NCBI RefSeq assembly: GCF_006345805.1
Contig: NC_043003.1
Span: forward strand, 103,726,001 to 103,790,000
Reading direction: 5' to 3'
DNA from: Octopus sinensis
Lineage: Eukaryota
Length of the DNA stretch: 64,000 bases
The position numbers were made by a program, and so were the translations under genes. Below, one piece after another: positions 14,480 to 54,133 of the stretch; within the stretch, counting starts at the first letter, position 1, and each line of letters begins with the position of its first letter. A model generated the notes under the pieces. That model ran no database searches. It had not been told where the DNA came from and saw only the letters and a program-made list of their open reading frames with translations.

Positions 14480-14970
14480 ATGGCAGCCTCACTCTCATTG
14501 CCATCTCGTCCGGCAACTAGAAACTGTAAAATAAATATGAATAAAAGCTGTGTAAATGTAACAATGAATGGCTCACCTCATAGAACTCCTCATGCCACTT
14601 CTGCACCAGCTTCAGCAAAGGCCCAAATTTCCAAGAAGACTATTGTTCAAAATGGTTTTCTTCAGAATGGATTTGTATCACCACTGCTCTCCAAGAATGA
14701 AAGAAGACTATCACCGGTCAAGCAAAAAACACTCCCTCGCAGGAGGAAGAGATCTCAAAGGATAAAAACATTGATGGATACATCAAGAAGACTTTCTACA
14801 TGTTCAACACCTAGAAGAAAAACCAGAAGGAAAATTCTCAAAGATAGGTGTCAGAGAACTGCGGTGAATAAACTAGGTTCTGAGAAGAAAAGCATTACAG
14901 TGTCATTGAAAAAGAAGTTGTCTAAAACTAACTCTATTAGTTCAGCCACACAGTTCAGGACAAAAATGAA
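14480..14970 (+). CDS. Coding exon 1: basic, Ser/Pro-rich N-terminus
   Basis: ORF MAASLSLPSRP...TQFRTKM, with an in-frame upstream TAA at 14429, donor AA|GTAAGT at 14971, and candidate acceptors at 14145 and 14458. Confidence 0.8.
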
Positions 14971-17900: not shown

Positions 17901-18776
17901 GGCACAGAATGTTTTCACCTCAATAGACGTCATTGATTGGTTCGAAATGCAAGAAATTAAAGACCAAATATCTTACAAACTATAGAATTTTCTCAAGAAA
18001 GCCAAGAGAAAACAATGTTTTATAAACACATTCTACCAGTATACAAAGTTTAACATTTTTTAGTTACAAAGAAATTATTTTTAAAATCTGCTGGTCAAAG
18101 CGAAAAGATCCAGTCATGGTATACATTATAAGTATTATTTTTACTTATTACAAGAAAGAGAGGCAGGTGCTGTGACTTCTGTTCTTCCCAGGTAGTAAGA
18201 TTGATGTAGTTAATTTTTTGCCTTCATCCTTATATGAAGGTTGATGCCTGTAAAAGAAAAAGAGGATATTGCATAGAGCTACAATTCTGGTGGAAGTACT
18301 TAGTATGCGATCTAAGATCGAGGTACATTAGATTGATGAGAAGAAGTGCATTGGGTGAGCTTGGACAAAGGCGGTGCAAACAATGTTAATTGAGGAATTG
18401 AGGAACACAGAAGTTATTATAGAAATAGAAGAAAGAGACAGAGGAAAGATATAACATGTATAAAAATAGGTTTCTGGTTATAATTTCACTGTTAATATTC
18501 ATGAGAAAGATTTTACTGAATGCCACAACATCCTATTTGATATTTTCTTGTGAATTTGAAGCTTTGCACCTATGTAAGAAATTAATATTTTATGTCACTA
18601 AATCCTTTGAGAAACACTTTGTCATATTCATATTCAGTATATCCAAATCCTTGTGCCTGCATAACAAATGAATTTAATTTTTCTTATTGTTTTTCTATGT
18701 TTTGTGAGGGTGAGCAGATCAATTTCCAAGATTCAGTCTACTTCAGGGAATAAATTGTAAGTATCTATCGTCTAAG

Positions 18777-18827
<51 letters not shown>

Positions 18828-21800: not shown

Positions 21801-24528
21801 GAGCATAAAACAGGAAGACAATTTTGGCCTGATATGGCCGGTTTAAACACTAAAGAGTTAATATTCCTCACACTTTCCATTGAATTGTTGCCTTTGTTGA
21901 TCTCATAAAGCACTTTCTTTTTCTATTATAGAAGATCCCAGAGATTGAGCCAACAGACATCTTCACCTCCAAGATCTTCAAGACAACCAATGTAATTGAG
22001 ATTTCTGTCACACTCTTTTTGAAGTCATGGTGGTGGTGGTGGTGTACATGGCATTTCTTGCAATGATTGTATTGAGGAAAATTGGTGTATCTGGCAGTAC
22101 TAGTATTGATGGTAGAGGGAGATGATTGTGATGATACGAAGTGCATTACAGAAGTTTTAAGACTTTTTGAGGAGAGGCAGTTGTAACTGTCCTAGATTAT
22201 TGTAATTTAAGTATCATTATCCGAGCGTGATCGTTGCCAGAGCGGCTGTCTGGCCTCCGTTCCGGTGGCACGTAAAAGACACCATCACTCCAGTGCAAAA
22301 TACAACAAATGAAAAATTACTAGTGGTCAGGTGTTTCTGAGAAAATTCAGTAAAGACTCATAACCAATATATCACTTAACCAAACAACTCTTTAGTCCTC
22401 AATCTTTATCTATAGAACTTCTTGCATCTAAGGACGATTCCTTTGTCTTAATGGATCGTGAGGATATCGTGAAACACTGTAATGAGCGCTTAACTGTTCA
22501 TTCTGCCTCAAATGGACCATTTCCCTACCAATAAAAAAAAAAAATGTTTTATATATATATAAGCACAAGCATGGCTGTGTGGTAAGAAATTTGCTTCTCA
22601 ACCACATGGTTCAGGGTTCTCTCCTGCTGCAGAGTACCATCAGGCCTTGTGAGTGGATTTGGTAGAGGGAAAATGAAAGAAGCCTGTCGTGTGTGTTTAT
22701 TTTTGTTCCCCTCTGCTTGAAAAACATTTAAGTCCCCATAATTTAGCAGTTTGGCAAAAGAGACCAATAGAATAAATACCAGGCTTGAAAAGACAATAAG
22801 TACTGGAACTGACTAGTTTGACTAAAATTTCTCAAGGTAGTGCCCCAGCATGGCCACAGTCTAATGACTGAAACAAAATAAAAGATAAAAGATATCACAT
22901 GTGCATGTGTATGCATAGAAAGATGGGTGATAACACTATGATGGTCATGATATTGATAATTTTATTGTGCAATTAATAACCTCATCAACCAGCCAGTGAT
23001 AGAGACAGGGTTAAACCCCTGTTGATCATTTCTGTCTTAGATATGTTTAACATTATTTTATTACAACTTTTGTACATAATTCATGATTGTTATTGTTATT
23101 TTCAGAAATAGCGAAGTAACTCGTACTCCAAAAATGGACCCATCTCCAAGTCTACCAACCATGATGTAAGTTGAGGATTCTATTCTTGAGTGTGTGTGAG
23201 TGTATGTGGATACCATCACCATCATTTACCATCCATCTTCCATGCTGGTATGGGTTAGACGGTTTGACAGGGTCCAATGGGTAGAGAAACTGCATTGAGC
23301 TCTAATGTTCTCTTTGGCATGCTTTCAAAGGCTGGATGTCCTTCCTAATGTCAACCACCTATTGTACTAAATACTATTTTTGTTGGCACCAACACTAGTG
23401 TAGTTGACATGTGACTTGCAAGATTAAAAAAACCCTTCAACTTTCTGGGAGTAAAGGAGATGGGAGGCAGTGTTTCATCATAGAGAAAAAAGAACAGATT
23501 TCTTGCTATAGAGGAGATACATGGCAACAATGAATTATATTTGGGTTATATAAAGGTGGGAGTGAGATTTTGTGGTGGAACTGAAAACTCTGTATGTATA
23601 TGTATATATATATATATGTGTGTGTGTATGTATTTATAAATGGATATATATATATACAGGGTGCGATGGGTAAATTGTTGCCATCTTATATTTTTTATTT
23701 TGTGCATGCACATTGCTTGTTTTTGATTTTGCTGACTACACACTATAGTAGGGTCAGTTGGGTACTGTCAGTGAGAAAAACAGCACCATTACACAATTCA
23801 CTCTGCCAGTAATTAGGAAACGACATGTGGTACTGCTTGGCATTTGAGCCAGAAGCTCCAATACAAACATTTCAGAGTGTTTGGGTGTCAATCTGAGGAC
23901 ATACACCAAGAGTGATAAAAATCAAACATCCCGTCAACATCACATCATGATGTTTGGAATGATCACTAGTGATGACGACATTATGCCTCCATTCATCTTC
24001 CCACACGGCCTCAGACTCAACATGGAGGCCTACATCAAGTGCCTGGAGGAGGTAGTGCTGCCCTGAGTCACGAGGGTGGCTGCTGGAAGACCCTATGTCT
24101 GGCAACAGGACTCTGCACCATGCCACACAAGCAAGAGAACCCAGTCATGGCCGTCAGAGAATTTCTGCAACCGCATCACCCCTAACATCTGGCCACCTAA
24201 CTCTCCAGACTGCAACCCCCTTGATTATTATGCGTGGGGTGCAGTTGAACAAGAGACCAACAAAACTCCTTGTAACACCAAAGATTAACTGAAGGCAAGG
24301 ATTATGGCAGTATTCACCAACTTAAACAAGGAGACCATCCAGTAGAGTCGCAGGAGATTCTGAAGTCATCTGGAGGCTGTGGTTGAAGCCAATGGCGATT
24401 TTATTGAGTAAATTTACTCTTTAGTATTTCAAGATATTTTTATATAATTTTGGTAAATATATCTGTTAAAATGAGATGTCAATGTTATTTTCATTTTTAT
24501 GTAATTTGGGCAGCAGTTTATTCACTGC

Positions 24529-24573
<45 letters not shown>

Positions 24574-27500: not shown

Positions 27501-27971
27501 CAAATTTTAACGGAAGTTTTAATTTAAATCACTTTAACCCTTTTGTTATCATATTTCTTAAAAAAAAATACCTTTGTCTCTATTAATTGTGGGAATGATG
27601 AAAAATTTAGTAGAATACCTTTGTCTTAATTAGTTGGTATTTGGAATGTAAGCTGACATGAAAATTTTAATGGAAAGTTTGATTTAGATTACTTTAAAAC
27701 AGGACATTTGTATTATGGAACCAGAGATTTTTATCAGACAAGCTGGCATCAAAAGGGTTAAGTAAAGGATTTAAAAAATCCCAGATGTCTTTGAAAGCAC
27801 AGAATAATCAGTTATAATGTTAACAAGGAATATGAATATCTTCACATCATCACCATTTCACTCAAGCAGTGACATGTATGAAATAATAACTTTCATACAC
27901 ATCTGTGTGCACATGCACACACACACACTTGATGGGTTTCCTGCAGTTTCCATCTACCACTTTAACTCATA

Positions 27972-28014
<43 letters not shown>

Positions 28015-32946: not shown

Positions 32947-32980
<34 letters not shown>

Positions 32981-38900: not shown

Positions 38901-41900
38901 CTATGTTACTTTTAGTATTATATTTATTAGTAGTATTATTCCACCAATGATAATGTAAAAAACTGATGCTAGTGATTTAAGTTTTTGGGTCAGTTTTGAT
39001 CTCCATTTGTTGTTTTGAACTAATCATGCATTATCTTGTAGCTATGAGATTTTGATGAGGTAGCTGTTTATTTTTAAAACGATATTGTAGGGTTGGTGTG
39101 AGAGACCAGATCTGGCCAGTTTGAACATAAAACACGTAGAATACTTTTGGCCGGATATGGCTGGTTTAAATGCTAAAGGGTTAATGATACTCCTGGGAAT
39201 TGAATATAGTCTTCACTTGCTTCTTGTTCCCAGTTATGTAACATTAAATATCTAAGTCAGTTACCCAAATAGATACAATGTTGAACAACTGCTCATATAC
39301 TGGGTTCAAATCTGCTGAAGGATTTCATTGTGATTCTGTTCAAAACACTTCATCTCCTGACTATTTCAGTATATCCTGCTACAGACATTGTAGCATCATC
39401 GCAGTAAACCATTGTGTTGCACTCAAGAGGGGTTCAGCTAGATATATCATTTATGTTGTACATATACGATTTTTTTTCTCATATATGTCATACATTTGTG
39501 ATTCATTTTTTTGTGGAAACTTCCATTTCTTTCCATGTATCACTCATGTTTGTTTTTAATTTCTTTTACTTAAATCTAGGGTCAAACCCCTTTCTCACTA
39601 GCGGTTAACCTTGGTCAATTACGAGTGGCTCAGTACTTAGAAAAACATTCTTTGAATATCACTCCTCCATGTATAGACACTCCATTATCGAGCGCACCCT
39701 CATCAAGAGCCTCCTCTTCTAACTCTCCATCTGAGAGCAATGGAGACCACTTACTTCCACATGAAGCAACAGATGTTGGCCCCAGTGCAGTCAGTTCAAC
39801 AAGTAATGCTGCCAGTGATGCCAGCACCCCACCTTTTTCAAAGAGAATCAAAGTGGAAGGCTCTCTGGTGAGTGTTTGTTTTCATTTTATTCTATTTCAT
39901 TTCTTTTTTCTTTTTATTTATGTATTTAATCAGCACCAAGGGTGTCAGTTTAAGGTGCTACACAAATCTTATTACCACTGATATACTGAATTCCACTTCC
40001 TACAGTTGAGTGATTAGGGGTTGCTACAACCAATAAAGCCTCTAACTCAGCCAAGTAAGAAGAAATTGATGTGAAACAATAAACAAAACAAATCGATGGG
40101 ATTGACAGAATCGTTTGATTATTGACGAAATAATTTGTGGGAGTCATTTGTGTATCATACTGTTGTATATATACCATTGAAAAGCAGGCTGCTGGGGTTT
40201 TTGTCTGAGAGTAGATCTCTTCATTGATATATTGGAGCAAGAACGTTATTGCAGCAGTAACTCACAACAATGTCAGATGCATTTTGACATTTTGGGCCTT
40301 TTCAATAACATGTACTTATTTGTCACATGCTTAAATGAAGTTTGTGCTTTGGTTTGTAGGAAACAGTGAATAATATTACTGAGATGTACTTGCATAGCAA
40401 GTGACTTGATCTGAGATTGTGTGCTGGAATGAAAACAATTGCAGCGTGGAAGGTGTTTGTAAGCCATTTAAGAAACACACAAAAACCGTTAGATTTACTT
40501 CAACATTTAAATTTAATTTGTGTCAAAATATTTTCATTGCTTTGGGACTGCGACCTGTTCACTGACAAAACTTTGTGGTGCAGCATGAAGTTTTGTCAGT
40601 GAACAGGTCGCGATTTCAGAACGCCGAGAATATTTCGACAAATTAAATTTAAATGTTGAAGTGAATCTAACGGTTTTTGTGTGTTTCTTAAATGGCTTAC
40701 AAACACCTTCCAGTGAATAATATGTTCACTGATATTGTGGAATGCTTGTCAAACTGTAAAAAACGAAGTAAATGCAATTGAAGCTACATTAAATTAAAAT
40801 AGACATCTGTGTATCGTACAGGCAGCTTTGGTTTTTTTGTCTGGTAGAAAACCTCTTCATAATGGTAATTTGAATCCCTCTTTTCCTATTGCACACTCCA
40901 ATCATCTTCATGAATCATATGAGAGTATGCAACTTTTACTTCATGCCATTGACTATGAAAGATACTCATGGAAAATATGTGGAGATTTAAAAGTCATTGA
41001 AATGTTAATGAGAATGCAGTCAGGTTCCACAAAATACTGTTGTTTCTTGTGTGTATGGAATAATCAGGCAACTGACAGACATTATTTGGAATCAAACTGG
41101 CAGACAAGAACAGCATACCAGCCAGAGCTGTCTATCATCAAGAATACACCTCTTGTAGATCCATGTAATGTCCTATTGCTTCCTTTGTGCATAAAGATTG
41201 GACAAAACAGTTTGTAAAGTTACTAGGCTTGAGTAGAAAAGTTTCCCCAAATCACACAGGCATAATTGAAAGTGGGTATCTTTGTTGGACCCCAAATTAG
41301 AGAAGTACTCAAAGATGTCAACTTCAAGACAACAATGGATGAACTGGAACTGCCTGCCTGGAATGCTTTTGGTTCTGTGAGAAAGCTAACAAGAAGGCAA
41401 TGGACTCCAAGGATGGCTTCAAGAATCTTCTGAAATGTTACTAAGAAATGGGTTGTCGCATGTCACTGAAAGTTTACTTCTTGGACCCCCATCTGGATTT
41501 CTTCGTAGATAACCTTGGAGCAGTGTCTGATGAACATGGTGAAAGATTTCACCGGGACATTAGTGCTGTGGAGAAATGGTGCCAAGGCTTCTGGAATGAC
41601 AGAATGCTCGCTGACTACTGCTGGACACTTTACCGTGATCAACCAGATCAGGAACACTGCAGGAAATCCAAATCACAATGTTTCTAACTCTATTGTTCTA
41701 ACTTTGTCTCTTTTGTCTGACCCATTTTTTTTGTGCATTCACTCTTTGTAGAACGATAGTAAGGATTTTAAACTCAATATATTCATTTACTTTTTTAAAA
41801 TAATATGTCCTTATTTGTTACGTTATTGATTTCATATATACAAATATGTAAATATTTGAATGTATCTACTCAAAAATTGATGTGCTACATACAAATGGAG

Positions 41901-44900
41901 TGAAATTTTGAAATCTGTATGAAAAATTAAAAAGGTTGGTTTGCATTAATAATGAGTATAATACATTTAATTTTGAGTATAATACATTTAATTTTGTTGA
42001 CCAATGTTATTGGGCACTCAGTTCACTTAAAGTACTCTTTTGACATGATACGAGGGGCGTTCAATAAGTAATGCCCCTGGCCCACTTCCCATAGCAGTAG
42101 AGCAACAAAACTTGGCACAGTTATTAGTCTTTTTCTACATAACCACCCAGTTATTAGTCTTTTTCTACGTAACCACCCAGAGTTACGCATTTCTCCCATC
42201 GTTTGATGCAGCTCTAGAGACCGTTTTTGTAGAAGACCCCAGCTTGGTCCTCCAATCACAACGTGACTTCAGAAATCAAGGCTGCATCATCTGGGAAACG
42301 CTTTCCTTTCAAAAACAACTTCATGGCTGGGAAGAGGTGAAAATCAGAGGGTGCAAGGTCAGGAGAGTAGGGGGGATGGGGGGAGTTCATAGCCGCATGC
42401 CTGTGCTTCTGATCTGGCGACACGCGAGTTGTGGACCGGAGCGTTGTCCTGCAGGAGGAGGATGCCTTTGCTGATCTTGCCCCGCCTCTTGATTTTGATA
42501 GCTTCTCTTAATTTCCTCAAAAGTGAATCATAATAGGCTCCTGTAATTGTGGTACCCTTTGCCAGGAAATCAGTCATCACTACTCCGTCCTGGTCCCAGA
42601 AGACTGTGAGCATGACCATACCAGCGGAAGGCTGCACCCTTGCCTTCTTTGGAGGAGGTTAGTCACGGTGCTTCCACTGCATTGGCTGTGCTTTGGTCTC
42701 TGGATCATAGTGATGGACCCAGGTTTCATCCTTGTGTAATCAGTCTTTTGAAAAATTTTGACTCATCTTCTTGGCACATCTCCAAATTCATCCTCGAGCA
42801 CTCGACGCGTTCTTGCTTCTGGAAAGGTGTGAGCAACCTGGGAATCCATCTGGCAGACACCTTTTGCATATGCAAATGGTCATGAATGATATTTTCCACA
42901 GACCCGGTACTAATCTTAACCTGATGGGCTATTTGGCGAATTGTTATGCGTCGATCTTCCAAAATGGCAGCCTCAACTTGACGGACAGATGCCTCATCAA
43001 TGGCAGAAGGGGGGGGTGACCAGATCTGGGAACTGTTTCCACAGAGTTCTGACCATGTTTGAATTCACGATACCAGCGTTTTACAAGGTCATATGATGGG
43101 GCTTCATCACCATAAGTTACTTTCATTTCATCAAAAGTCTCCTGTGGTGTGCGTCCTTTCAAATACAAAAACCGGATCACTGCTCGACACTCAACAGGCT
43201 CCATTTCACACTTGACTCAGTTCAAACACCTGTAAATCAGAAACCACAATTAGTTCAGAGCTGTAATTTGCCATTTAATCTATAGAGATATAAATAATTG
43301 CACATGCAAAATTTCAGCTAGATCAAACAACTGCAAGTGAGTCAGGGGCATTACTTATTGAACGTCCCTCGTATATGCAAGTAGTACTTTGGTACTTCAT
43401 GTCTCAATGGGTTTTTAAGAAGCTACTCAAATCATCATGGCTCGGCTTCGCGAACGAAGATCAGGAAGGCTGTCCACGTTGCGTGCATGCATGCTCATGA
43501 CTGACAAGTCCGATATGGGAAAGGCAGGTCCGTGAGCAGTGTCCACAGACGAAGGTAACATCTGGTGTGGTGTCAGAGGCAGCTCGCGCCTTCCTCCTGC
43601 ATCTCTTGTCTTTAAGTGCGTTGCTTCTTTGTTCCTCAAACTTGTTGACTGCATCAAAGATCGTGTGGCGCCAGACATCACTGTCCGCAGCCAGGTCTGA
43701 CCAGCATTGGTGGTTAATATGACATGCTACTAGAGACTTCTTGAGGCAGTCTTTGTAGCGCTTCCTCGGAGCTCCTCTCACTCGGTGGCCGGTGGAGAGT
43801 TCGCCAAACAGGGCAATCTTTGGAAGGCTACTCATGTGCACACACAAATCACAAATGTAAACCTAGCTGAAGAATTGTATTGAAGCAACATAGTTTATGC
43901 AATGTGCACAAATAAAAAGTACTTGCTCCATTGATAGTCAAATAGCCAACTAAATAATTCTTTAATATATTGCATTTAGCATGCCATACTTTGATTTACA
44001 GCCTATATCAGACAGGTACCTTGTGGGGTAGCGTCTTTTAGTATACTTGATTCTCCTTTTCTATAGGAACATGTTTTTGACACTGTAACATTGTGACATA
44101 ACAAATGCAGGCATGGCATCTTGGTAAGTGCATTTATCGTAGCCATGGCAAGTGATTTTAGATAAATGGAAACTTTTGGATGGACTGTGCCTGCTGTTCA
44201 AATGTCCAGTTTTATCACACGTATGTCACACTGATTATGCCTGAGCAATTAAATCAAGTTCAGCCACTTTTTATGTTTATTTAATGAGTTGGTTGTCCCA
44301 TTCATCAAACAGCTGGATGCTCATACATTACAATTTATGTGAGAGTCCATCACTGAAAGATTAAATGTTGTCTGCTTGCAGGCAATCTTGGTCAGCTGAC
44401 CTCTCCCAATGTATTTATTTGACTTTACATTCATGTACCAACATTGTTACACTGGTTAACTTGCCCAGATTAAATTTAACCAAAAACATTTTCTCTCCCT
44501 CTCTCTTCCCTCCATATCAGCCTAGCGACTACGAATCTGATGTCAGTGAAAACACAGGACAGTAAGTAATTCAATCCTCTCCTTCATCATTAAATTATTA
44601 TTGTTGTTGTTGTTGATGTTACAAATGGAATTTGGTAGAGAATCACTCTGTAGAAACGTACAGCAAATGTCTGTGTGTCCATGTCTATTTTTTTTACCTT
44701 TTATCCGTTATTTGTTTCAGTAATTAGACTGCAGTTATCATGGGGCACCGCCTTGAAGAATTTTAGTCAACCGAATCAACCCCAGTACTTTTTTTTAAGA
44801 CTTGTACTTATTCTGTTGGTCTCTTTTGCTGAACAGCTAAGTTATGGGGATGTAAAGACACATTGGAGGTCAAGTCGTGGTGGGGGACAAACACATACAC

Positions 44901-45964
44901 ACATAGATATATACATATATGACGGGCTTTTTCAGATTCTGTCTTCCCAGTACTGCTGCAATCCAGTGACTGAAATGGTGAGGTGGATGTGATAACAAAC
45001 TATGAAGAAGACGTTGCCTCCTGTGAGAGGTGTAAAATGTCTCAACCAATTAAATATTTAAGAAAAAGAAAACTCCAAATCAAAATTCACTCATTAGCAT
45101 TTAAACTAGCTGTATCTAGCCCAAATATATTCTACCTGTTTTATACTCAAACTGACCAGATCCAGCCTCTCACACCTGCTCTACAATGTCATTCTAAAAC
45201 TTGGCTGAGTGGTAAGAAGCTTGCTTCCCAACCAGATGGTTTGAGGTTCAGTCCTTGGGTAAGTGTCTTCTACTATAGTCTCAGGCTAACCAAAGCCTTG
45301 ATAGATAGAAGCTCAAAGAAGCTCATTTTGTGTGTGTGTATGTATGTATAATTAATCAAGAAAAAAATAAAGAAAATCACAAGAAAAAAACAATAACGCG
45401 AGGACATGGTACATGCAAAGTATTAAAAGATGCTCAGGGAAGGAAAGGAAGGTAGTTTTATGTGTTGAGCAAAGCTCTTCTTCAGAAACAGGAGACAGAG
45501 GAGAATCCAAGAGAAAAGGAACATGGAAGAAACAAAATCGCCAATGATCCACATGTAGTTACATTTTGAGGTGTGTATATGTGTGTATGTAAGGATTGGA
45601 ATCGAAGGGCCTTAGAGTCAACTTAGCTAAAACCAAAGTCCTAATAAGTAGGAAGGCAGACAAACCACAAATCCCTGCTCGATCTGTAGAAAAGGTGGAG
45701 GTAGAAACTTTATAAGATGTACTCAGTAAGCCAACTGCTCCTTGGCTATTTATTTGTGTATTTTCATTTGATATACATGTGTGTGTATATTTATATATAG
45801 GCGCAGTAGTGGCTGTGTGGTAGGTTCCAGGTTCAGTCCCACTATGTGGCAACTTGGGCAAATGTCTTCTACTATGGCTCTGGACTGGGCAAGGTCTTGT
45901 GAGTATATTTGGTAGACGGAAACTGAAAGTAGCCTGTCGTATATATATATATGTATGTATGTAT

Positions 45965-46001
<37 letters not shown>

Positions 46002-48262: not shown

Positions 48263-48293
<31 letters not shown>

Positions 48294-51200
48294 TTGTTAC
48301 GCCGTCGCTCAACTCAACTTAGGACCCTAAGTCGGCGATGACGACTACGCTCAGTCAAACGGAAATCCACCACAGAAAGCGGGGGTGGGCAGCGAACGCA
48401 AACCAGTAACCAGAGACAACAGCAACAAAGGAGAGAGACAGCAGAGGCAGTTGCTTACATTTAACAACAATTTATATAATTCACAACATCAATTGAAACA
48501 TTTCAAATACATTTAAAAACAAGGTTAACAGACATTTAACAGACCGTACACAGAGTTGAAAACAATCAAAACAATCAATGTCATTTAGCAGAATACAACG
48601 TCCGGCAACACCGGGTCATAATGCTAATGTATGCATATACAGCTGTGTGCGGGCACACATACACATGAGTTCTGTCCAAATCTCCAACCAATCACATACA
48701 GCTAGCTGGCATTCAATTGGCGTATCAAGTTTCGGGCATTTTGATTGAGTTTTGGATAGAAAATTCACAAAAAAGTCACTTCTATTGATTTTTTAATGGC
48801 TTTGCGGGGTGACTGGGGAAATGTAACGATGTGCATGAACTCCCTTGGACAGTTTTGAATGACCATAGAAAGTGCGATCCCTCTAACTGAAAAATTGTGG
48901 ATTTGTATAAAGGACTCACACACAGACATTTTGCCGTTTATATATAGAGAGATTTTGTTTATTGCATGCTTAAGACCATAAGTTGAAAGGACCAATGAAA
49001 CAGAACCATTTTCAAATATGTATCCATTAAACTAATTGTGTATGTTTGCTTATAACCTTATTTCTGTTCCATTTTAAACAAAACTGTCCAACAAACAGGA
49101 ACAGGAAACTCTGAGTAACAGTTTTTGTGATATTTTTGCTGCTTTTCAATAAAGTATATGTATGCATACATCTATGTGTTTGTCTCCCCCATCACCGCTT
49201 GACAACCAGTGTTGGTGTGTTTACATCCCTGCAACTTAGCAGCTCGGCAAAAGCAACTGATAAAATAAGTAGTAGGCTTAATAGATAAGTCTGGGATCAA
49301 TCCATTGCTCCAGCATGGCCGCAGTCAAATGACTGAAATAAGTGAAAGAATAAAAGAACAATTATGTCATTGAAATTTTGATGCTACAACATGATAAATG
49401 TCAAAATGTAAAGAAATAAACTTTATATTTGCTGGAGTAATCTGAATGCTAATGGGTTGATTACTGAAAACTTTACATGGTCTACTCAAGTAAAGTCTTG
49501 GAATTAGCTTTAGAAGATTTTAAAGTTTTTCTGTTTATCTTTGATGACTTTTTACTATGTTTTTTTAAACCTTCTTTCTTATTTTTCCAGGTATTCTTCA
49601 TCAGGAGACTATCCATCTAAAGTTAAACATGTATTTAGAAAATGTGAGTATCCATAAATATGAAATATTTAAAACCCTTTCATTACCATATTTCTGTTGA
49701 AAGTCACTGCTTTTGTTTCAGTTACTTTTTAAAAGACTGGGGAACTTAGTAAAATAACTTTTGTCACTGTTCAAGGTAGTTTCTAAAACATAATGTGGAA
49801 CTTTGATGGAAGATTTTTATTTAACCCTTGTGTTATCAAACTGCTGTTGAAATAGACTCTCTTTGTTTCGATTAGTTTTGAATTATTAGTAAAATAACTT
49901 TGAAGTGGTTGGTGTTGGGGAGAGCATCCAACTATAGAAACCATGTCAAGGTAGACCTTAGAACTATGCCAGCATGGAATGCAAACGTCAAATGGCAATG
50001 ATTCATCATCATCATCATTGCTTAACATCCGTTTTCCATGCTAGCATGGGTTGGACAGTTCGACAGGGGTCCGGGAAGCCAGAAGGCTGCACCAGGCTCC
50101 AGTCTGATCTGGCAGTGTTTCTACAGCTGGATGCCCTTCCTAACGCCAACCACTCCGTGAGTGTAGTGGGAGCTTTTTATGTGCCACCGGCACAGGTGCC
50201 AGGCAAGGCTGGCAACGGCCCCGATCAGTTAGTGCTTTTTACGTGCCACCGGCACGGAAGCCAGTCAAGGTGGTGCTGGCATTGGCCACATACGGATGGT
50301 ACTTTTTAGGTGCCACCGGAACAGGTGCCAGGGTAGGCTGGCAATGGCCACAAACGTTTGGTGCTTTTTACGTGCCACCGGCACAGAAGCCAGTCATGGC
50401 GGCGCTGGCATAAGATCAAAATTTCCTCAAATTTTGGCACAAGGACTGTAATTTCATTGGAGGTGGTAAGTTGATTACATGAATCCCAGTTCTTGACCAG
50501 TGCATATTTTTTCAACTGAAAAGAATCATAAGCAAAGTCAACTTCAGGAGTATTTGAACTCAAAATGTAAAGACAGAGGAAATGTTGTTAAACACTTTGC
50601 CTGATATGCTAATAATTCAACCAGCTCACCACCAAGAGACTCTCACTCTTTGTGTCTAGTAGGAATATTTCATTGTCTACTGTCTACTGTCAAGTCTACA
50701 TCTGCTAGAATACTCTCTCATCACTCTAACACTCTTTTCATTCTTCTCTCCCTCCCATTGTGTCATATGACTAAAGATGGCAGTGGATTTCTCCTCCTCA
50801 TTGTAACTAAGGATGTCACTGGACCTATCTAACCCTCTCATCTCTTCAACACAACCCCTGCCTCTCTCATCCTCATCAACCTCTATATTTCACTCATCAT
50901 GAGGCTTATAGATAAAGGATCACATCAGATGTGCATGGCACCCTATCCAACTCTACCATTACCTTTTCTATCTTCCTTTCCTTGGACACTTGTTATTGAC
51001 ATTTACTCTTAGCATTTATCCACCTCACCTTTACCCACTGACTTTAATTCCTCTTTGTTGACTTCAACTTCTGTGTCTGAAAGATTCTGGGATAGCTGGT
51101 CTACTATCCCATTGTTCATGCTCTCATCCACCTAGAAAACCCCAGAATAGTTGAACTATGTATGTTACTATCCATCTCTCTCTCTCTCTCCCCCTTTACC

Positions 51201-54133
51201 ACTATCCTGACCCCATTACTCTGTTTTTACCATCACACCCTTACTCCTTTCATCCACTTATCCTGATTCTTTCATCTTCCTTTCTTTTATTCACTGCCTC
51301 GGCCATGTAGCCCTACATGTAGCCCTACAAAAACATGTATAGAGTGATGAGGGCTATTAAGATAGAAAGCAACTTCACTAATTGGTGCCAAAAAATAAAA
51401 GTGTTGCTAAGTGAGTGTAAAGTGGTTGGTAACTGAGTGGAAACATGGGGAGAGGTTGAGAGGACCCTTTAGGCTTGTTGATACCTGATAATCTGTCAAG
51501 TATTGGTGTTGTGATAAAATGCACCCAGTCCACTCTGTAAAGGGATTGGTGTTGGGATGGGTATCCAACCTTAGGAAACCAAACTATAAATTAAATGTAA
51601 TAACAAGGTGTAGTCCCCAACCCATCTAGGAGGGCAGTAATTCTGAATATAAACTGGTTTGGACCGTGATGACCTGGTCAACTCTTACGAGCATTCTACA
51701 GCAAAATTATGATTCAATTTTTTAAAATTAAAAATATATTTTTTTCATTTTATCAATTTTGTCAATTCACTTTAAGGTTCTAACAACACTTCTGACGGAA
51801 TTTTGAAGCAATATTTCCACATCTGCAATGACAGTGCTCGAGAAAACCTTATTGCCAGTATCAACATGGACAAAAACAAGTGTTTGCAAGATCTGAAGGT
51901 CACAGAAGAAAGATTGGCAGGTTCGTGAAAAAACAGAGATTCCCTTCTTTTATCTCATCGTTTATATAGATTGGTGGTGGTCTTGGTCTTATGTTATAAT
52001 TCCATTCACATCTAATATGATTTATAGGAATATTAAATTGATCTAAGTACTTGGCTGGTACTTTATTTTAGTTCAGTCCTCACTGCCTCGCTCAGGCAAT
52101 GCATATAGGCTAAAGGTTCAAACACTTGTGATTCTGAGATACCTGCTGATAACATTGAAGGGTTTCCAACTTTGTGGTGGATTTAGAAGAGCCTGCAAAA
52201 TCTGAGTAGCTCCTGCAGTTTCAGCATGGGACAAAGTATCTCTGGTATTTATTTCACCTTATATGGAACCCAAAAGCACGAGAGGCACAGGGGTTCTCAG
52301 TAGGATTTGAATTCAGAATGTGAGAGGCCATCACTAAATATCACAGGCATTTTGTCTTACGATTCTGCTAATCCACCATCTTGATTGTCATGGTTGGTGG
52401 TGGTGACGTAGGGGTGGCAGGGGCAAGGGTGTCATGGTTGGTGGTGGTGACATAGGGGTGGCAGGGGCAAGGGTGTTCATGCTCAGTCAGCCCTAATTCT
52501 GCTGATCTGTCTTCTTCTTGTCTTGAGACAGCATTCACCCGGGGTGGGTTGTGCTGGCTTCATTCATCTTCAATGCTGCATCTCTCACAAACGCCGACCA
52601 GACCTGGCGATTTGAGGCTCCAACCACTCTTTATTCCAGTGGCAAACGCCGTAGATATGGGGTCCTAGGTTGGGTTCCAGACCAGCCTTGACTGTCATCA
52701 GCCAGGTTTTACGTTGTCCACCACATCACTTTCACCAGCCCTGAAAGGGAGCTGGGGCAATTGCTTCGTAGATCTGTGATCAAATATGTCCTTCCTTTTA
52801 TTAAAATCGTAAACTTATAATCTTTTCTACAATAGGTGCAAGGCCTGAGATATTGGAGGAAGTTACTAATTGATTACATTGGCCTCTAGTACTCATCTGG
52901 AACTTATTTTATCAACCCCAATGAGATGGAAGGCAAGGTCAACCTTGGTGGGATTTGAACTCACAATGTGGTCACTAATCATTCTGTCTAGTATGCTAAT
53001 AATTCACAATGATGATAATAATTCTTTATAATTTTGGCAGAAGGCCAACAATTTTGAAGGGAAGGGAAAATCAATAACATTGACCCCAGTTTTTGTCTGG
53101 TACTTATTTTATTGACCCTGAAATTATGAAAGACAAAGTTGACCTTGGCAGCATTTGAACTTAGATTGTAATGCTAAAAGAAATGCCACTCAGCATTCTG
53201 ACCCAAGATAACAATTCTGCTAGCTTGTCCTGTCTTGATAATAATAATGATTATGATGATGATGATGATGATCATCATCATCATCATCATTTAGCGTCCG
53301 CTTTCCATGCTAACATGGGTTGGACGGTTCAACTGGGGTCTGGGAAGCCAGGAAGCTGCATCAGGCCCAGTCTGATCTGGCAGTGTTTCTACGGCTGGAT
53401 GCCCTTCCTAACACCAACCACTCCGTGAGTGTAGTGGGTGCTTTTTACGTGCCACCTGCACAGGTGCCAGATGGAGCTGGCAATGGCCATGATCGGATGG
53501 TGCTTTTTACGTGCCACCGGCACGGGGGCCAGGCGGGGCTGGCAACGGCCACGAACGGATGGTGCTACGTGCCACCGGTACGGGGGCCAGGTGAGGCTGG
53601 CAATGGACACGAACGTGCCACCGGCACGGAGGCCAGTCGGGGCGGCGCTGGCAACGGCTATGATCGGATGGTTCGCTTACTTAATCCTTTCTACTATAGG
53701 CACAAGGCCAATAACAATTTAGAATAGGTGTAAGAGGCTGGATGTGACCAGTTTCAACAGACAACAGGTAGAATATTTGGAGTGCTATGGCTGATTTAAA
53801 TGCTAAATAGCTAATCATTCACCCATTTATGTAAATGTCAACTTGAAAAAAGAATACTGTTTTGTTTTTCTCATAATTCATTCACCATTTGTTTTTGTTT
53901 CTCTTTATCTCTCCATTGCAGCTTTATCTCGACAGATTGAATCCATATGTACAGAGAAACACAAAAAAGAGACTGAAATACGTCGACTTATGATAGAGAT
54001 AAAAGGGTTTGATCAGAGCTTGGAGAAACTGAAAGAAGAGAAGCAAGAGCTGACAGAAAAGTCCTCCTCACTTGATGCTAAAATCTCTCTATGTGTGTCT
54101 GTCTTAAAGATGGTCCTCAACAAAAACACATGA
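14480..54133 (+). CDS. 12-exon gene, 685-aa ankyrin-repeat / coiled-coil protein (Swi6/Cdc10-like ankyrin block)
   Basis: join(14480-14970,23106-23165,29155-29223,32639-32804,34149-34233,34555-34863,36938-37077,39580-39867,44521-44561,49591-49643,51777-51920,53922-54133) = 2058 nt. All introns are GT-AG, phases 2,2,2,0,1,1,0,0,2,1,1 are consistent, and there is no internal stop. The ATG choice is less certain than the internal structure. Confidence 0.88.
15513..15835 (+). mobile_element. 5'-truncated copy of the RTE 3'UTR with (GAT)n tail; further copies at ~19058-19203(+), 29960-30288(+), 33597-33990(-), 35380-35555(+), 35815-35982(+), 36072-36224(+), 37222-37432(+), 50003-50410(-), 53255-53672(-)
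   Basis: Share GGCACGTAAAAAGCACC, GTGGTTGGCRTTAGGAAGGGCATCCAGCTGTAGAAAC and CCATGCTAGCATGG..TTAAACGATGATG with 13-490. Confidence 0.9.
17231..18111. mobile_element. Foldback-type MITE with ~225-bp TIRs, related to 9183-9597
   Basis: Starts GGATCTTTTCGCTTTGACCAGCAG and ends CTGCTGGTCAAAGCGAAAAGATCC. 17231-17455 mirrors ~17890-18111. The internal block matches 9215-9360. The flanks AATCATG / AGTCATG form an imperfect TSD. Confidence 0.88.
19257..21026 (-). mobile_element. Decayed mariner (DD34D) transposon, interrupted by a minisatellite
   Basis: TIR TTGGGTTGGCAAGAAAGTAATTTC and its mirror at ~20998-21026, TA flanks, and transposase motifs MECKNEHF, IITGDEKW, KKVMLSIWWD, HHDNTRP and HPPYSPDLAPSDYHLF in several frames. 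Confidence 0.95.
20179..20743. repeat. 40 x 14-bp minisatellite CTG(A/T)CAGGTGCATT
   Basis: CAGGTGCATT recurs exactly every 14 nt from 20183 to 20729 (40 units). Confidence 0.98.
21119..21290 (-). mobile_element. Mariner transposase C-terminal remnant
   Basis: NHLGRKNTNSVDEIRTVVEEYFSSQTSEFWKRGFASLPDRWKK matches the typical mariner C-terminus. Confidence 0.7.
21651..21857. mobile_element. piggyBac-like MITE (TTAA flanks); related right end at ~39090-39180
   Basis: TTAA|CCATTTAGCATTT...AAACACTAAAGAG|TTAA. Confidence 0.65.
23106..23165 (+). CDS. Coding exon 2 (60 nt, phase 2-2)
   Basis: TTTTCAG|AAATAGC...CATGAT|GTAAG; encodes NSEVTRTPKMDPSPSLPTM. Confidence 0.8.
23657..24534 (+). mobile_element. 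Internally deleted Tc1/mariner, DD37D (maT)-like
   Basis: TA|CAGGGTGC.. with a mirrored ..GCACCC end. Remnants MMFGMITSD.DIMPPFIFPHGLRLN and WQQDSAPCHTSKRTQ..WPPNSPDCNPLDYYAW. Confidence 0.85.
25442..25593. repeat. Hairpin-forming inverted repeat (~68-bp arms)
   Basis: ACAAATGTCACTAAATGTGACTAG..TAAACCGC is mirrored by GCGGTTTA..CTAGTCACATTTAGTGACATTTGT. Confidence 0.88.
27538..27757. mobile_element. piggyBac-like MITE
   Basis: TTAA|CCCTTTTG...CAAAAGGG|TTAA, 220 bp. Confidence 0.75.
28061..28463 (-). mobile_element. Full-length tRNA-head SINE with internal microsatellite (family B)
   Basis: The reverse complement is nearly identical to 56751-57143; 3' end CAGCATGGCCGCAGTCAAATGACTGAAACAAGTAAAAGAG. 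Confidence 0.88.
29155..29223 (+). CDS. Coding exon 3 (69 nt, phase 2-2)
   Basis: TTTTCTCTCTAG|GAATGAA...TTCCT|GTAAGT; encodes NEPLTPAETPPIHTADADLPSF. Confidence 0.78.
30572..31058 (+). mobile_element. 5'-truncated LINE (RTE/RTEX-like) ORF2 C-terminus with (TGA)n tail
   Basis: ORF with VEPILLYGSETW, RRVQFAGH and WRNIV. The stop codon is followed directly by TGATGATGATG. Confidence 0.9.
32120..32546. mobile_element. Inverted pair of Penelope-like terminal repeats, each with a hammerhead-like motif
   Basis: ~32120-32282 mirrors ~32384-32546; GACAC-CTGATGA-A-GGCTG..CAGCC-GAAAC at 32455-32492. Confidence 0.7.
32639..32804 (+). CDS. Coding exon 4 (166 nt, phase 2-0)
   Basis: CTACTTTCAG|GAAGGAC...TATGAG|GTTGGT; encodes KDQAYPIKCPPFCNKCCTNKHSKLLLALL...INYYE. 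It supplies the phase change needed to enter exon 5. Confidence 0.8.
32984..33211 (+). mobile_element. SINE family A (AAGGCGGYGAGCTGGCAGAA head); near-complete second copy at 60653-60884 and many fragments (9850, 10280, 10795, 12850, 15280, 38335, 53030)
   Basis: Shared GAGTTCAAATT..GAGGTCGACTTTGCCTTTCATCCTTTCGGGGTCGATAAATTAAGTACCAG core and GCCCCTTGTGGG..AAAGAAATA end. Confidence 0.88.
34149..34233 (+). CDS. Coding exon 5 (start of ankyrin repeat 1)
   Basis: TTTTTCAG|AAAAAG...CTTA|GTAAGT; encodes KKNWRRNSAIFDVNPEYRYPLMHWAAIL. Confidence 0.88.
34555..34863 (+). CDS. Coding exon 6 (ankyrin repeats)
   Basis: TTTAATAG|GTAAATT...CCAG|GTGAGT; encodes KLNILKWLASAGYNIN..TGDTALHRVLL..AGLTPFLTSC..KERP. 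Confidence 0.92.
35807..36250 (+). repeat. Local tandem duplication of an RTE-tail copy plus flank
   Basis: The unit ..CTAGG(G/A)GTGTG..TTAGGAAGGGCATCC...GATGATTGATTTACTAAAATCACC occurs twice with a partial third start between them. Confidence 0.85.
36938..37077 (+). CDS. Coding exon 7 (ankyrin repeat)
   Basis: TCTACAG|GATTAC...AAAGAG|GTAAGC; encodes LLNILFNQQTKHGQSALHLIAL..MLVAAGANVQCLNKE. Confidence 0.92.
39580..39867 (+). CDS. Coding exon 8 (last ankyrin repeat plus Ser-rich linker)
   Basis: AAATCTAG|GGTCAAACC...CTCTG|GTGAGT; encodes GQTPFSLAVNLGQLRVAQYLEKH...KRIKVEGSL. Confidence 0.9.
40447..40712. repeat. Foldback element with ~125-bp arms
   Basis: TGGAAGGTGTTTGTAAGCCATTTAAGAAACAC..GCGACCTGTTCACTGACAAAAC is mirrored by GTTTTGTCAGTGAACAGGTCGC..GCTTACAAACACCTTCCA. 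Confidence 0.9.
40815..42007 (+). mobile_element. Decayed DNA transposon, Chapaev3 (CMC)-like transposase remnant
   Basis: LHNGN..PIAHS..HESYESM..WKICGDLKVI..KYCCFLC..LLLPLCIKIG and MGCRMSLKVYFLDPHLDFF..SDEHGERFHRDIS. The family assignment is from recalled motifs. Confidence 0.7.
42051..43371 (-). mobile_element. Full-length (1321 bp) mariner, Hsmar2/irritans-like TIR, frameshifted transposase
   Basis: TA|CGAGGGGCGTTCAATAAGTAATGCCCCTG..CAGGGGCATTACTTATTGAACGTCCCTCG|TA. Motifs MEPVECRAVIRFL, VSARWIPRLLT, VMLTVFWDQDG and LLQDNAPVH are spread over 3 frames. Confidence 0.96.
43427..43840 (-). mobile_element. 5'-truncated RTE (BovB-like) C-terminus with CCHC zinc knuckle
   Basis: LPKIALFGEL..RGAPRKRYKDCLK..WRH..CGHC-x12-H-x3-C, followed by a short 3'UTR ending in a GATGAT-type tail. 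Confidence 0.88.
44521..44561 (+). CDS. Coding exon 9 (41-nt microexon)
   Basis: Long polypyrimidine tract ..CCATATCAG|CCTAGC...GGACA|GTAAGT; encodes PSDYESDVSENTG. Confidence 0.82.
45590..45700 (+). mobile_element. Short internal fragment of the PHD-RTE family
   Basis: TCGAAGGGCCTTAGAGTCAACTTAGCTAAAACCAAAGTC encodes SKGLRVNLAKTKVL, matching 1560-1630. Confidence 0.8.
46575..48235 (-). mobile_element. 5'-truncated Penelope-like element (Neptune-type GIY-YIG endonuclease and 3' region)
   Basis: NCKNENSCPLEGKCLVKGVVY..TYTGASENSFKTRFYSH..CKLCLLEK in ORF 47746-48312. The 3' end carries CTGATGA..GAAAC and AATAAA near 46580-46655. Continuity of the intervening segment is inferred. Confidence 0.8.
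48630..48955 (+). mobile_element. Helentron/DINE-like non-autonomous repeat; inverted related copy at ~25600-25820
   Basis: Shared AATCAAAATGCCCGAAAC / CCCCGCAAAGCCATTAAAAAATC block; ends CAGACATTTTGCCGTTTATATATAGAGAGAT. Confidence 0.5.
49591..49643 (+). CDS. Coding exon 10 (53 nt)
   Basis: TTTTTCCAG|GTATTC...AAAAT|GTGAGT; encodes YSSSGDYPSKVKHVFRK. Confidence 0.82.
51777..51920 (+). CDS. Coding exon 11 (start of helical C-terminus)
   Basis: CACTTTAAG|GTTCTAAC...GGCAG|GTTCGT; encodes SNNTSDGILKQYFHICNDSARENLIASINMDKNKCLQDLKVTEERLA. Confidence 0.82.
52525..52790 (-). mobile_element. RTE LINE C-terminal remnant (SR2-like)
   Basis: The minus strand encodes GQRKTWLMTVKAGLEPNLGPHIYGVCHWNKEWLE. 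Confidence 0.7.
53922..54133 (+). CDS. Coding exon 12 (coiled coil, stop)
   Basis: CTCCATTGCAG|CTTTATC...ACATGA; heptad pattern in IRRLMIEIKGFDQSLEKLKEEKQELTEKSSSLDAKISL. Confidence 0.88.

What the first reader, a model, noticed from the sequence alone, without database searches (positions are those of the whole stretch)
14480..54133. Animal gene whose ankyrin block resembles fungal SBF/MBF subunits (Swi6/Cdc10/Mbp1)
The spliced product reads YPLMHWAAILSKLNILKWLASAGYNIN..TGDTALHRVLL..NNP..KKFPQILEILEPNLKIKNRAGLT..TVGMDG..Y..LL..(short spacer)..LFNQQTKHGQSALHLIA..MLVAAGANVQCLNKEGQTP. From memory of the yeast proteins, this follows the atypical Swi6/Cdc10-family pattern rather than regular 33-aa tandem ankyrins: HW in the first repeat, a long second repeat ending F..LL..L.P.L, a degenerate third repeat with GM.G, a spacer, then N.Q...G..L and GA+....NK.G..P. 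The order ankyrins then C-terminal leucine-zipper-like coiled coil also matches Swi6/Cdc10. I see no KilA-N/APSES DNA-binding domain. SBF/MBF is regarded as fungal-specific, with animals using E2F/DP, so a true homologue in a mollusc would bear on the origin of the SBF scaffold and could mark an undescribed animal transcription or cell-cycle complex. Eleven introns argue against contamination or recent transfer. The exon structure is seen in the sequence; the homology is inference and unverified.
Basis: partly seen in the sequence, partly recalled or inferred. Interest (0 to 1): 0.8.

Follow-up and report, generated by a model that had tools for sequence, protein, structure and literature searches.

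The report
Octopus ankyrin/coiled-coil gene, Swi6-like look unproven
This is a real, already catalogued but unstudied octopus gene for a protein with five ankyrin repeats and a long C-terminal helix; its ankyrin domain lines up repeat for repeat with the yeast cell-cycle factors Swi6/Mbp1 better than with ten animal ankyrin families I tested, but common descent could not be shown.

Summary
The gene is real. Fourteen coding exons (14480-54133, + strand) translate exactly to Octopus sinensis XP_029639070.1, "uncharacterized protein LOC115214145", 721 aa. The O. vulgaris copy is publicly labelled "SWI4-like".

Architecture:
- a basic, disordered N-terminus with NLS-like clusters and CDK-type sites
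- a Cys/His motif and two cap helices
- five ankyrin repeats, with repeats 2 and 3 irregular
- an acidic, Ser-rich linker
- a ~100-residue C-terminal helix with heptad periodicity

No KilA-N/APSES domain was found. Orthologues appeared only in cephalopods and one bivalve.

Tests of the Swi6 idea were mixed. PDB profile searches and Foldseek list designed or generic ankyrins first, and 1SW6 never appears. By hhalign, gankyrin scores as well as the fungal sequences. The regions before and after the ankyrin domain show no significant similarity, and the fungal C-terminal dimerisation motif is absent.

However, in HMMER tests with ~90 control ankyrin proteins, the mollusc and fungal Swi6/Mbp1 domains are each other's best end-to-end match (41-60 and 38-46 bits; best controls 40 and 34). 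The match also depends on repeat order, unlike nine of ten animal families.

Verdict: a mollusc ankyrin/coiled-coil adaptor. The Swi6 resemblance is real, but homology is unresolved (about 0.3).

The parts
14480..14970 (+). Coding exon 1 (aa 1-164). Basic (pI ~12), Ser/Thr/Pro-rich, probably disordered N-terminus. Has NLS-like clusters RRRKR (14738-14752) and RRKTRRK (14813-14833) and three of the four [ST]P.[KR] sites (SPHR, SPVK, TPRR).
   Evidence: ATG and donor GTAAGT; exact match to XP_029639070.1; composition and motifs
18709..18756 (+). Coding exon 2 (aa 164-180), a small Ser-rich exon. Exons 2-4 are the likely source of the shorter annotated isoforms.
   Evidence: isoform lengths
21932..21991 (+). 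Coding exon 3 (aa 180-200), RSQRLSQQTSSPPRSSRQP, with the fourth [ST]P.[KR] site (SPPR)
23106..23165 (+). Coding exon 4 (aa 200-220), NSEVTRTPKMDPSPSLPTM
29155..29223 (+). Coding exon 5 (aa 220-243), EPLTPAETPPIHTADADLPSF
   Evidence: tblastn with the Argonauta orthologue; sequence
32639..32804 (+). Coding exon 6 (aa 243-298). Holds the conserved C-X3-C-X3-C-X3-H motif KCPPFCNKCCTNKH (32661-32702) and two helices that cap the ankyrin domain (SKLLLALL; SFKNFLNTINYYEKK).
   Evidence: conserved in all five cephalopods; helices in the AF2 models
34149..34233 (+). Coding exon 7 (aa 299-327): start of ankyrin repeat 1 (EYRYPLMHWAAILS)
34555..34863 (+). Coding exon 8 (aa 327-430). Rest of repeat 1; irregular repeat 2 (GDTALHRVLLCIRAIRLNNPVMVKKFPQILEILEPNLKIKNRA); first part of irregular repeat 3, including the start of its long helix.
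   Evidence: 76% identical to Argonauta in a 1.84-billion-protein search; AF2 pLDDT mostly >90
36938..37077 (+). Coding exon 9 (aa 430-476): short helix LLNILF, then canonical ankyrin repeat 4
39580..39867 (+). Coding exon 10 (aa 477-572). Ankyrin repeat 5 (to 39648), then a Ser/Pro-rich disordered linker with KRIKVE (39841-39858).
   Evidence: linker pLDDT <50
44521..44561 (+). Coding exon 11 (aa 573-586), the acidic CK2-type stretch PSDYESDVSENTG. The first 12 residues (PSDYESDVSENT) are identical in Argonauta.
49591..49643 (+). Coding exon 12 (aa 586-604), YSSSGDYPSKVKHVFRK
51777..51920 (+). Coding exon 13 (aa 604-652): short helix SDGILKQYF, then the start of the long C-terminal helix
53922..54133 (+). 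Coding exon 14 (aa 652-721 plus TGA): remainder of the ~100-residue helix with heptad periodicity (presumed dimerising coiled coil)
   Evidence: one continuous helix at model residues 385-483, pLDDT ~90; 62% hydrophobic a/d positions in one register

Best explanation
This is the Octopus sinensis gene LOC115214145. It belongs to a family seen so far only in molluscs (cephalopods and the bivalve Solemya).

The 721-aa protein most likely works as a nuclear scaffold that does not bind DNA itself. Inferred steps:
- The ~100-residue C-terminal helix pairs into a coiled-coil dimer.
- The five-repeat ankyrin domain, capped by two N-terminal helices and a small Cys/His motif, offers a surface for one or more partner proteins.
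- The basic, disordered N-terminus carries two NLS-like clusters next to CDK/MAPK-type Ser/Thr-Pro sites. The acidic linker carries CK2-type sites. Both would place import and partner binding under phosphorylation control.

In this sense it works like ankyrin-plus-zipper cofactors such as Swi6/Cdc10 or GABP-beta.

Shown: gene structure, conservation, ankyrin fold, long helix, and absence of any recognisable DNA-binding or enzymatic domain. Inferred: nuclear location, dimerisation, cofactor role.

The Swi6-like look of the ankyrin domain is taken here as a shared irregular-repeat layout plus general ankyrin similarity, not as demonstrated common descent.
For: - Exact match of the 14-exon model to XP_029639070.1.
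- Orthologues only in cephalopods and Solemya, in a 1.84-billion-protein HMMER scan with the most distinctive exon and in a profile search of 5.8 billion proteins.
- Pfam finds only ankyrin families above cut-off.
- AF2 model of the domain: pLDDT 82.8, five helix pairs plus cap helices.
- AF2 model of the C-terminal two thirds: disordered linker and a single 99-residue helix.
- Heptad periodicity, basic clusters, four [ST]P.[KR] sites, N-terminal pI 11.9.
- Generic ankyrins head the PDB profile and Foldseek lists.
- hhalign scores: gankyrin 103, Notch1 95, MYPT1 94, against 69-113 for fungal sequences.
- Flanking regions match fungal proteins no better than shuffles: pre-ankyrin 91/200 shuffles reach the native score, C-terminus 7/150.
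Against: HMMER tests point to something more specific than generic similarity.
- A 12-sequence fungal Swi6/Mbp1 model aligns end to end with Solemya (59.8 bits), squid-type (~50) and Octopus (~41). The best of ~80 generic controls scores 39.9, and ten animal families score 15-30.
- The reverse search gives fungal sequences 38-46 bits against 34 for the best control.
- Native repeat order ranks 1st of 120 permutations against the fungal model. It mostly ranks 1st-2nd against single fungal sequences for Solemya and squid-type, but 22nd-111th for nine animal families.
- An independent public pipeline named the O. vulgaris copy 'SWI4-like'.

Nuclear location, dimerisation and a cofactor role are untested inferences.
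Confidence: 0.5

Rival explanations
1. The ankyrin domain, and perhaps the whole ankyrin-linker-coiled-coil layout, is a true but very divergent relative of the fungal Swi6/Cdc10/Mbp1/Swi4 scaffold. It would be either inherited from the opisthokont ancestor and lost in most animals, or transferred anciently. It would then act as the non-DNA-binding subunit of an unknown transcription complex, possibly cell-cycle regulated through its CDK-type sites next to the NLS, as Swi6 is.
For: - In-register alignment over repeats 1-5, with the same two irregular repeats.
- Reciprocal best colinear HMMER match among ~90 controls.
- Mollusc scores rose when the fungal model was made more diverse (octopus 24 to 41, Solemya 37 to 60, squid-type 24 to 51 bits), while the top control scores did not rise (39.5 to 36.8 bits).
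- The repeat-order dependence is seen with the fungal family, not with nine of ten animal families.
- In the atypical region, 13 of the top 15 non-mollusc hits are fungal.
- Solemya keeps the family's invariant YY in the repeat-3 helix.
- Same domain order, including a post-ankyrin coiled coil.
- Public label 'SWI4-like'.
- The published claim that SBF is absent outside fungi does not mention ankyrin repeats at all, so the ankyrin scaffold appears not to have been examined there (PMC4862756).
Against: - 1SW6 is absent from the PDB profile and Foldseek lists.
- hhalign does not separate fungal sequences from gankyrin, Notch1 or MYPT1.
- The atypical region gives only 12-15 bits one way and 4-9 bits the other, levels that single controls and PDB ankyrins such as SLF1 or ANKRD27 also reach.
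- Much of the order effect could simply reflect long repeats sitting at positions 2 and 3 in both families.
- The conserved fungal C-terminal motif (LP..LLKARI...K[FY]RR[VL]..LC) and family signatures (LHH, NAQD..GDTALNIAAR, GLRPxDFG) are missing.
- No N-terminal domain was detected.
- No homologues were seen in other animals or holozoans.
- The control panel is small compared with the diversity of ankyrin proteins.
Confidence: 0.3
2. It is a MYPT/PPP1R12-like regulator: ankyrin repeats dock protein phosphatase 1, and the C-terminal leucine zipper binds cGMP-dependent protein kinase. UniProt's automatic name for the O. bimaculoides orthologue suggests this.
For: - UniProt name 'cGMP-dependent protein kinase interacting domain-containing protein'.
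- Ankyrin repeats followed by a C-terminal zipper-like helix.
- hhalign score of 93.7 against the MYPT1 ankyrin region.
Against: - Current Pfam gives no PRKG1_interact hit at E<=1 in four orthologues.
- MYPT1 best-domain scores are 28.7 bits with the mollusc model and 19.5 with the fungal model, with no repeat-order preference (ranks 34-59).
- I saw no RVxF docking motif N-terminal to the repeats when reading the sequence.
- There are five repeats after a 310-aa N-terminus, not eight at the N-terminus.
Confidence: 0.05
3. It is an IkB/Bcl-3-type ankyrin protein that masks or co-activates Rel/NF-kB factors.
For: Irregular ankyrin repeats with extended helix-2/hairpin segments, a nuclear-type basic region and an acidic Ser-rich segment recall IkB proteins (my reading).
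Against: - IkB-alpha and Bcl-3 give only 19-22 bits best-domain with either model.
- They show no colinearity preference (ranks 29-75 of 120).
- This protein has five rather than six or seven repeats.
- IkB proteins have no long coiled coil.
Confidence: 0.05

Closest known systems
Octopus sinensis LOC115214145 (XP_029639070.1) and its orthologues: O. vulgaris CAI9726262.1 'SWI4-like isoform X2', O. bimaculoides LOC106882483, Argonauta hians GAB1598415.1, Solemya velum KAL5007734.1
   Same: The window encodes XP_029639070.1 exactly. The others share the whole architecture at 29-99% identity.
   Different: None has been studied. The names are automatic and disagree with each other (uncharacterized / SWI4-like / cGMP-dependent protein kinase interacting).
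Fungal Swi6/Cdc10 and Mbp1/Swi4/Res ankyrin domain (structure 1SW6)
   Same: - Five repeats, with repeats 2 and 3 irregular.
- In-register alignment over repeats 1-5.
- Reciprocal best colinear HMMER match in my panels.
- Ankyrin domain, then linker, then coiled coil; no DNA-binding domain, as in Swi6/Cdc10.
   Different: - About 21-22% identity in the alignments made (BLASTP and hhalign).
- Family signature motifs are largely absent.
- No fungal C-terminal dimerisation motif and no N-terminal domain.
- No significant similarity outside the ankyrin domain.
- 1SW6 is not recovered by PDB profile or Foldseek searches.
GABP-beta (ankyrin repeats plus C-terminal leucine zipper; the non-DNA-binding subunit of an ETS factor)
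   Same: Works alike in principle: an ankyrin surface for a DNA-binding partner, a C-terminal zipper for dimerisation, nuclear location (established knowledge of GABP).
   Different: - In GABP-beta the ankyrin repeats are N-terminal and regular.
- Best-domain scores are only 18-21 bits, with no colinearity.
- It is not a family member.
MYPT1/PPP1R12 (ankyrin repeats plus C-terminal leucine zipper)
   Same: Ankyrin repeats followed by a long disordered region and a C-terminal zipper. This is the source of UniProt's automatic name.
   Different: No PRKG1_interact match, no RVxF motif seen, a different number and position of repeats, and no colinear match.

Membership tests
Ankyrin-repeat superfamily | Repeats matching Pfam Ank/Ank_2/Ank_3/Ank_4 above gathering score, and a helix-pair solenoid fold | tested here: met
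   Ank_2 45-59 bits, Ank_4 42-55, Ank 33-48, all above cut-offs. The AF2 model shows five helix pairs, pLDDT 82.8. Foldseek probability 1.00 to ankyrin structures.
Swi6/Cdc10/Mbp1/Swi4 (SBF/MBF subunits) | Family-type ankyrin domain: five repeats with signatures HW, GET.L.RA, TN.Y/MD..T/SF, LHH, YY, NAQD..GDTALNIAAR, GLRP.DFG | tested here: inconclusive
   For: colinear end-to-end HMMER match of 41-60 bits against at most 40 for controls, reciprocal, and dependent on repeat order. Against: most signature motifs are absent, hhalign does not separate fungal sequences from gankyrin, and 1SW6 is not found by PDB or Foldseek searches.
Swi6/Cdc10/Mbp1/Swi4 (SBF/MBF subunits) | Conserved C-terminal region that mediates Swi6-Swi4/Mbp1 association (LP..LLKARI ... 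K[FY]RR[VL]..LC ... [LI][DE].[LI]..A[VI][ES]SE) | tested here: not met
   The fungal motif is visible in nine sequences. Full-length hhalign aligns only the ankyrin domain. The full-length fungal HMM gives at most 7.3 bits in the C-terminus. The by-eye 'ISLCV' resemblance has no statistical support.
Swi6/Cdc10/Mbp1/Swi4 (SBF/MBF subunits) | Coiled-coil/leucine-zipper segment after the ankyrin domain | tested here: inconclusive
   The element is present at the same relative position. Sequence similarity is marginal: hhalign 16.1 against shuffles 12.4 +/- 2.3, with 7/150 shuffles as high.
Swi6/Cdc10/Mbp1/Swi4 (SBF/MBF subunits) | Structured N-terminal domain (KilA-N/APSES DNA-binding domain in Mbp1/Swi4/Res; related N-terminal domain in Swi6/Cdc10) | tested here: not met
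   No Pfam match other than ankyrin in four orthologues. The N-terminal 237 aa have pI 11.9 and 34% Ser/Thr/Pro. The pre-ankyrin region matches fungal sequences no better than shuffles (91/200).
Swi6/Cdc10/Mbp1/Swi4 (SBF/MBF subunits) | Partnership with a KilA-N DNA-binding subunit, and binding of Whi5/Nrm1-type GTB motifs | not testable with these tools
   This needs the whole octopus proteome and interaction experiments.
MYPT/PPP1R12 | RVxF motif plus eight N-terminal ankyrin repeats, and a C-terminal PRKG1_interact (PF15898) zipper | tested here: not met
   No PF15898 hit at E<=1. MYPT1 best-domain is 28.7 bits with no colinearity. The repeats start at aa 313.
IkB/Bcl-3 | Six or seven contiguous ankyrin repeats of IkB type | tested here: not met
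   Five repeats. IkB-alpha and Bcl-3 give 19-22 bits best-domain, with native order ranked 29-75 of 120.

The most novel reading that the evidence does not exclude
The mollusc family is a true relative of the Swi6/Cdc10/Mbp1 ankyrin-coiled-coil scaffold. In that case the non-DNA-binding body of SBF/MBF is older than fungi (or moved between kingdoms) and survives in molluscs as the subunit of an undescribed animal transcription complex. Only the KilA-N DNA-binding head would then be the fungal, virus-derived novelty.
Probability: 0.25. Interest if true: 0.8.

Novelty: new member of a known kind. Interest (0 to 1): 0.45.

Why it matters
SBF/MBF is the textbook case of a fungal cell-cycle transcription factor with no counterpart in animals. 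The published survey traces its abrupt appearance to a virus-like DNA-binding domain (PMC4862756). That paper does not mention ankyrin repeats at all, so it appears not to have examined where the ankyrin/C-terminal scaffold came from.

If the mollusc family were a true relative, the scaffold would predate or lie outside fungi, and its animal partners would be worth finding.

If it is not, the case is a useful caution. Automatic names such as 'SWI4-like' and recalled motif patterns can arise from a shared irregular-repeat layout in a fold where every member looks like every other.

Either way, this is an unstudied, conserved mollusc protein that is probably nuclear.

Tried and rejected
1. My first gene model used an ORF at 16014-16224 with good splice sites. 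It is absent from all orthologues and was dropped.

I used a single exon and then database orthologues instead.

3. A word-indexed search with the 274-aa ankyrin region found only two weak generic hits.

4. PDB sequence searches with one protein, the domain profile and the atypical-region profile returned only DARPins, ankyrin-R and similar, never 1SW6. These searches have low power, because S. cerevisiae Swi6 is the fungal member least like the mollusc family.

5. Foldseek's top 50 are all designed ankyrins, and only 50 are shown, so the rank of 1SW6 is unknown.

6. The first fungal HMM (5 sequences) did not separate molluscs from controls. A metagenome scan gave 27 fungal loci and a better model.

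7. By-eye similarities all fail statistical tests:
- VSFKNFLNTIN versus VSFDSLLQEVN
- KHSKLLLALLNCDD versus KRNMLMSLFMNPND
- KQELTEK...ISLCV versus KQSELENKFRRVLSLC

8. Weak Pfam DUF7491 coiled-coil hits (E 0.0016-0.016, below cut-off) were not pursued.

9. The Solemya genomic locus could not be fetched because the gene spans 149 kb.

10. A literature search found no paper on animal SWI4/SWI6-like proteins.

Full report
**What is there**

The quoted peptides lie on the + strand.

A scan of 1.84 billion representative proteins with the most distinctive exon (34557-34862) found one close relative and one distant one. The close one is Argonauta hians, 76% identical. The distant one is the bivalve Solemya velum. 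Everything else was a short generic ankyrin match.

A profile search then returned four more proteins:
- O. vulgaris CAI9726262.1, labelled 'SWI4-like isoform X2'
- O. bimaculoides LOC106882483
- two squid-type proteins from transcriptome assemblies

Guided by these, I built a 14-exon model: 14480-14970, 18709-18756, 21932-21991, 23106-23165, 29155-29223, 32639-32804, 34149-34233, 34555-34863, 36938-37077, 39580-39867, 44521-44561, 49591-49643, 51777-51920 and 53922-54133.
- It translates exactly to Octopus sinensis XP_029639070.1, 'uncharacterized protein LOC115214145 isoform X1', 721 aa.
- Shorter annotated isoforms exist, probably skipping small N-terminal exons.
- The squid-type orthologue is an uninterrupted ORF on ~5-kb mRNA-like contigs from three runs. 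The junctions are therefore used in a relative.

**Anatomy**

| Residues | Feature | Evidence |
|---|---|---|
| 1-237 | Basic (pI 11.9), 34% Ser/Thr/Pro; clusters RRRKR and RRKTRRK; four [ST]P.[KR] sites | |
| 251-298 | C-X3-C-X3-C-X3-H motif conserved in all cephalopods; two helices that pack on repeat 1 | |
| 313-499 | Five ankyrin repeats (AF2 pLDDT 82.8, pTM 0.80) | |
| 501-617 | Disordered, Ser-rich and acidic; contains KRIKVE and SDYESDVSE | |
| 622-720 | One continuous helix, pLDDT ~90; 62% hydrophobic a/d positions in one heptad register | |

Within the ankyrin domain, repeat 2 has a long loop between its helices and lacks the usual Gly-Ala turn. Repeat 3 has a degenerate first helix and a 19-residue second helix, followed by a short extra helix. 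Pfam finds nothing but ankyrin families, so there is no KilA-N/APSES domain.

**Testing the Swi6 idea: results against**

I confirmed the 1SW6 chain sequence through the PDB search.
- PDB searches with one protein, with the domain profile and with the atypical-region profile list DARPins, ankyrin-R, latrotoxin, NOMPC, tankyrase, SLF1 and similar. 1SW6 never appears.
- Foldseek's top 50 hits are all designed ankyrins, with E-values from 4e-8 to 5e-7. 1SW6 is not among them.
- hhalign of the mollusc domain profile gives gankyrin 103, Notch1 95 and MYPT1 94. Fungal sequences range from 69 to 113.
- Full-length profile-profile comparison aligns only the ankyrin domain.
- The pre-ankyrin region scores no better than column shuffles: 91 of 200 shuffles reach the native score.
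- The C-terminal helix is marginal, with 7 of 150 shuffles as high.
- The conserved fungal C-terminal motif has no counterpart.

**Testing the Swi6 idea: results for**

- BLASTP aligns the domain with Swi6 in one register over 183 residues, at 22% identity and 28.5 bits.
- A metagenome scan gave 27 fungal Swi6/Mbp1-type loci.
- A 12-sequence non-redundant fungal HMM aligns end to end (positions 13-171) with Solemya at 59.8 bits, squid-type at ~50, Octopus at ~41 and Argonauta at 32.
- Against that same model the best of ~80 generic controls reaches 39.9 bits. These controls include the world-best hits and the generic loci pulled out by fungal patterns. Ten verified animal families reach 15-30 bits.
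- The reverse search with the mollusc HMM puts nine fungal sequences first, at 38-46 bits end to end. The best control scores 34 bits.
- Mollusc scores rose when the fungal model was made more diverse. The top control scores did not rise.
- I permuted the five mollusc repeats through all 120 orders. The native order ranks first for best-domain score in all three species tested.
- With single sequences, the native order ranks mostly 1st-2nd against fungal proteins for Solemya and squid-type, with native-order scores of 20-39 bits across the three molluscs.
- For IkB-alpha, Bcl-3, GABP-beta, gankyrin, p18, ANKRA2, BARD1, myotrophin and MYPT1 it ranks 22nd-111th. Notch1 is intermediate.
- In the atypical region alone, fungal sequences score 12-15 bits. 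One control reaches 13 and the rest 10 or less. That signal is weak, and in the opposite direction it is lost among controls.

**Weighing**

The colinear signal is reproducible and reciprocal. However, part of it may only reflect that both families carry their long repeats at positions 2 and 3.
- The residue-level signal in those repeats is small.
- hhalign and the structure search do not single out the fungal family.
- Nothing outside the ankyrin domain supports homology.
- The control panel is small compared with ankyrin diversity.
- The only solved fungal structure (S. cerevisiae Swi6) is the fungal member least like the molluscs. This weakens the negative PDB and Foldseek results.

I put a genuine specific relationship of the ankyrin domain at about 0.3. 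I put a functional SBF/MBF-like role lower than that.

**Most likely function**

The protein is most likely a dimeric ankyrin adaptor that is probably nuclear and regulated by phosphorylation. It has no DNA-binding or catalytic domain, so it would be a cofactor in the manner of Swi6/Cdc10 or GABP-beta. Which partner it binds is unknown.
- The MYPT-like reading suggested by UniProt's automatic name is not supported.
- The IkB-like reading is not supported either.

**Literature**

The survey that found SBF and Whi5 only in fungi does not mention ankyrin repeats at all (PMC4862756). No paper on animal SWI4/SWI6-like proteins was found.

Noticed in passing
window 14233-14478: Just upstream of the ATG, the DNA still matches residues 11-83 of the longer Argonauta N-terminus. 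Here the frame is broken by stop codons, and the upstream ATG at 14233 is in another frame. This is either a decayed or alternative coding extension, or the Argonauta model is over-extended.
   Followed up: partly
window 32661-32702 (aa 251-264): A C-X3-C-X3-C-X3-H motif (KCPPFCNKCCTNKH) has its Cys and His conserved in all five cephalopod orthologues, just before the ankyrin cap helices. AF2 confidence is low there. It may be a small zinc-binding knuckle.
   Followed up: partly
window 16014-16224: An open segment with a good acceptor and donor fits the phase of exon 1, but it is absent from every orthologue and annotated isoform. It is a convincing-looking false exon, or possibly an unannotated alternative one.
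   Followed up: yes
window 1072-3528 (- strand): Remnant of a non-LTR retrotransposon upstream of the gene. ORFs match reverse transcriptase (RVT_1) and endonuclease (Exo_endo_phos_2), with a PHD-like finger.
   Followed up: partly
window 24067-24285; 30557-31042; 40798-41684; 63221-63637: Other mobile-element debris, mostly inside introns: a DDE_3 transposase fragment, a reverse-transcriptase-tail-like ORF, two transposase-like ORFs with no Pfam match, and downstream of the gene a GIY-YIG nuclease ORF (possibly Penelope-like).
   Followed up: partly
window 54-518, 15462-15795, 19057-19166, 22211-22286, 29961-30256, 33611-33764, 35378-35468, 35819-35930, 36074-36185, 37247-37388, 50045-50410, 53314-53724: A SINE-like interspersed repeat of ~400 bp with an internal sub-repeat (translating as ...AFYVPPA...). 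At least 12 copies, in both orientations, at 70-92% identity. Most copies lie in introns of this gene.
   Followed up: partly
orthologue names: Three public pipelines give the same gene three unrelated names: uncharacterized, SWI4-like, and cGMP-dependent protein kinase interacting domain-containing. The last is not reproduced by current Pfam.
   Followed up: partly
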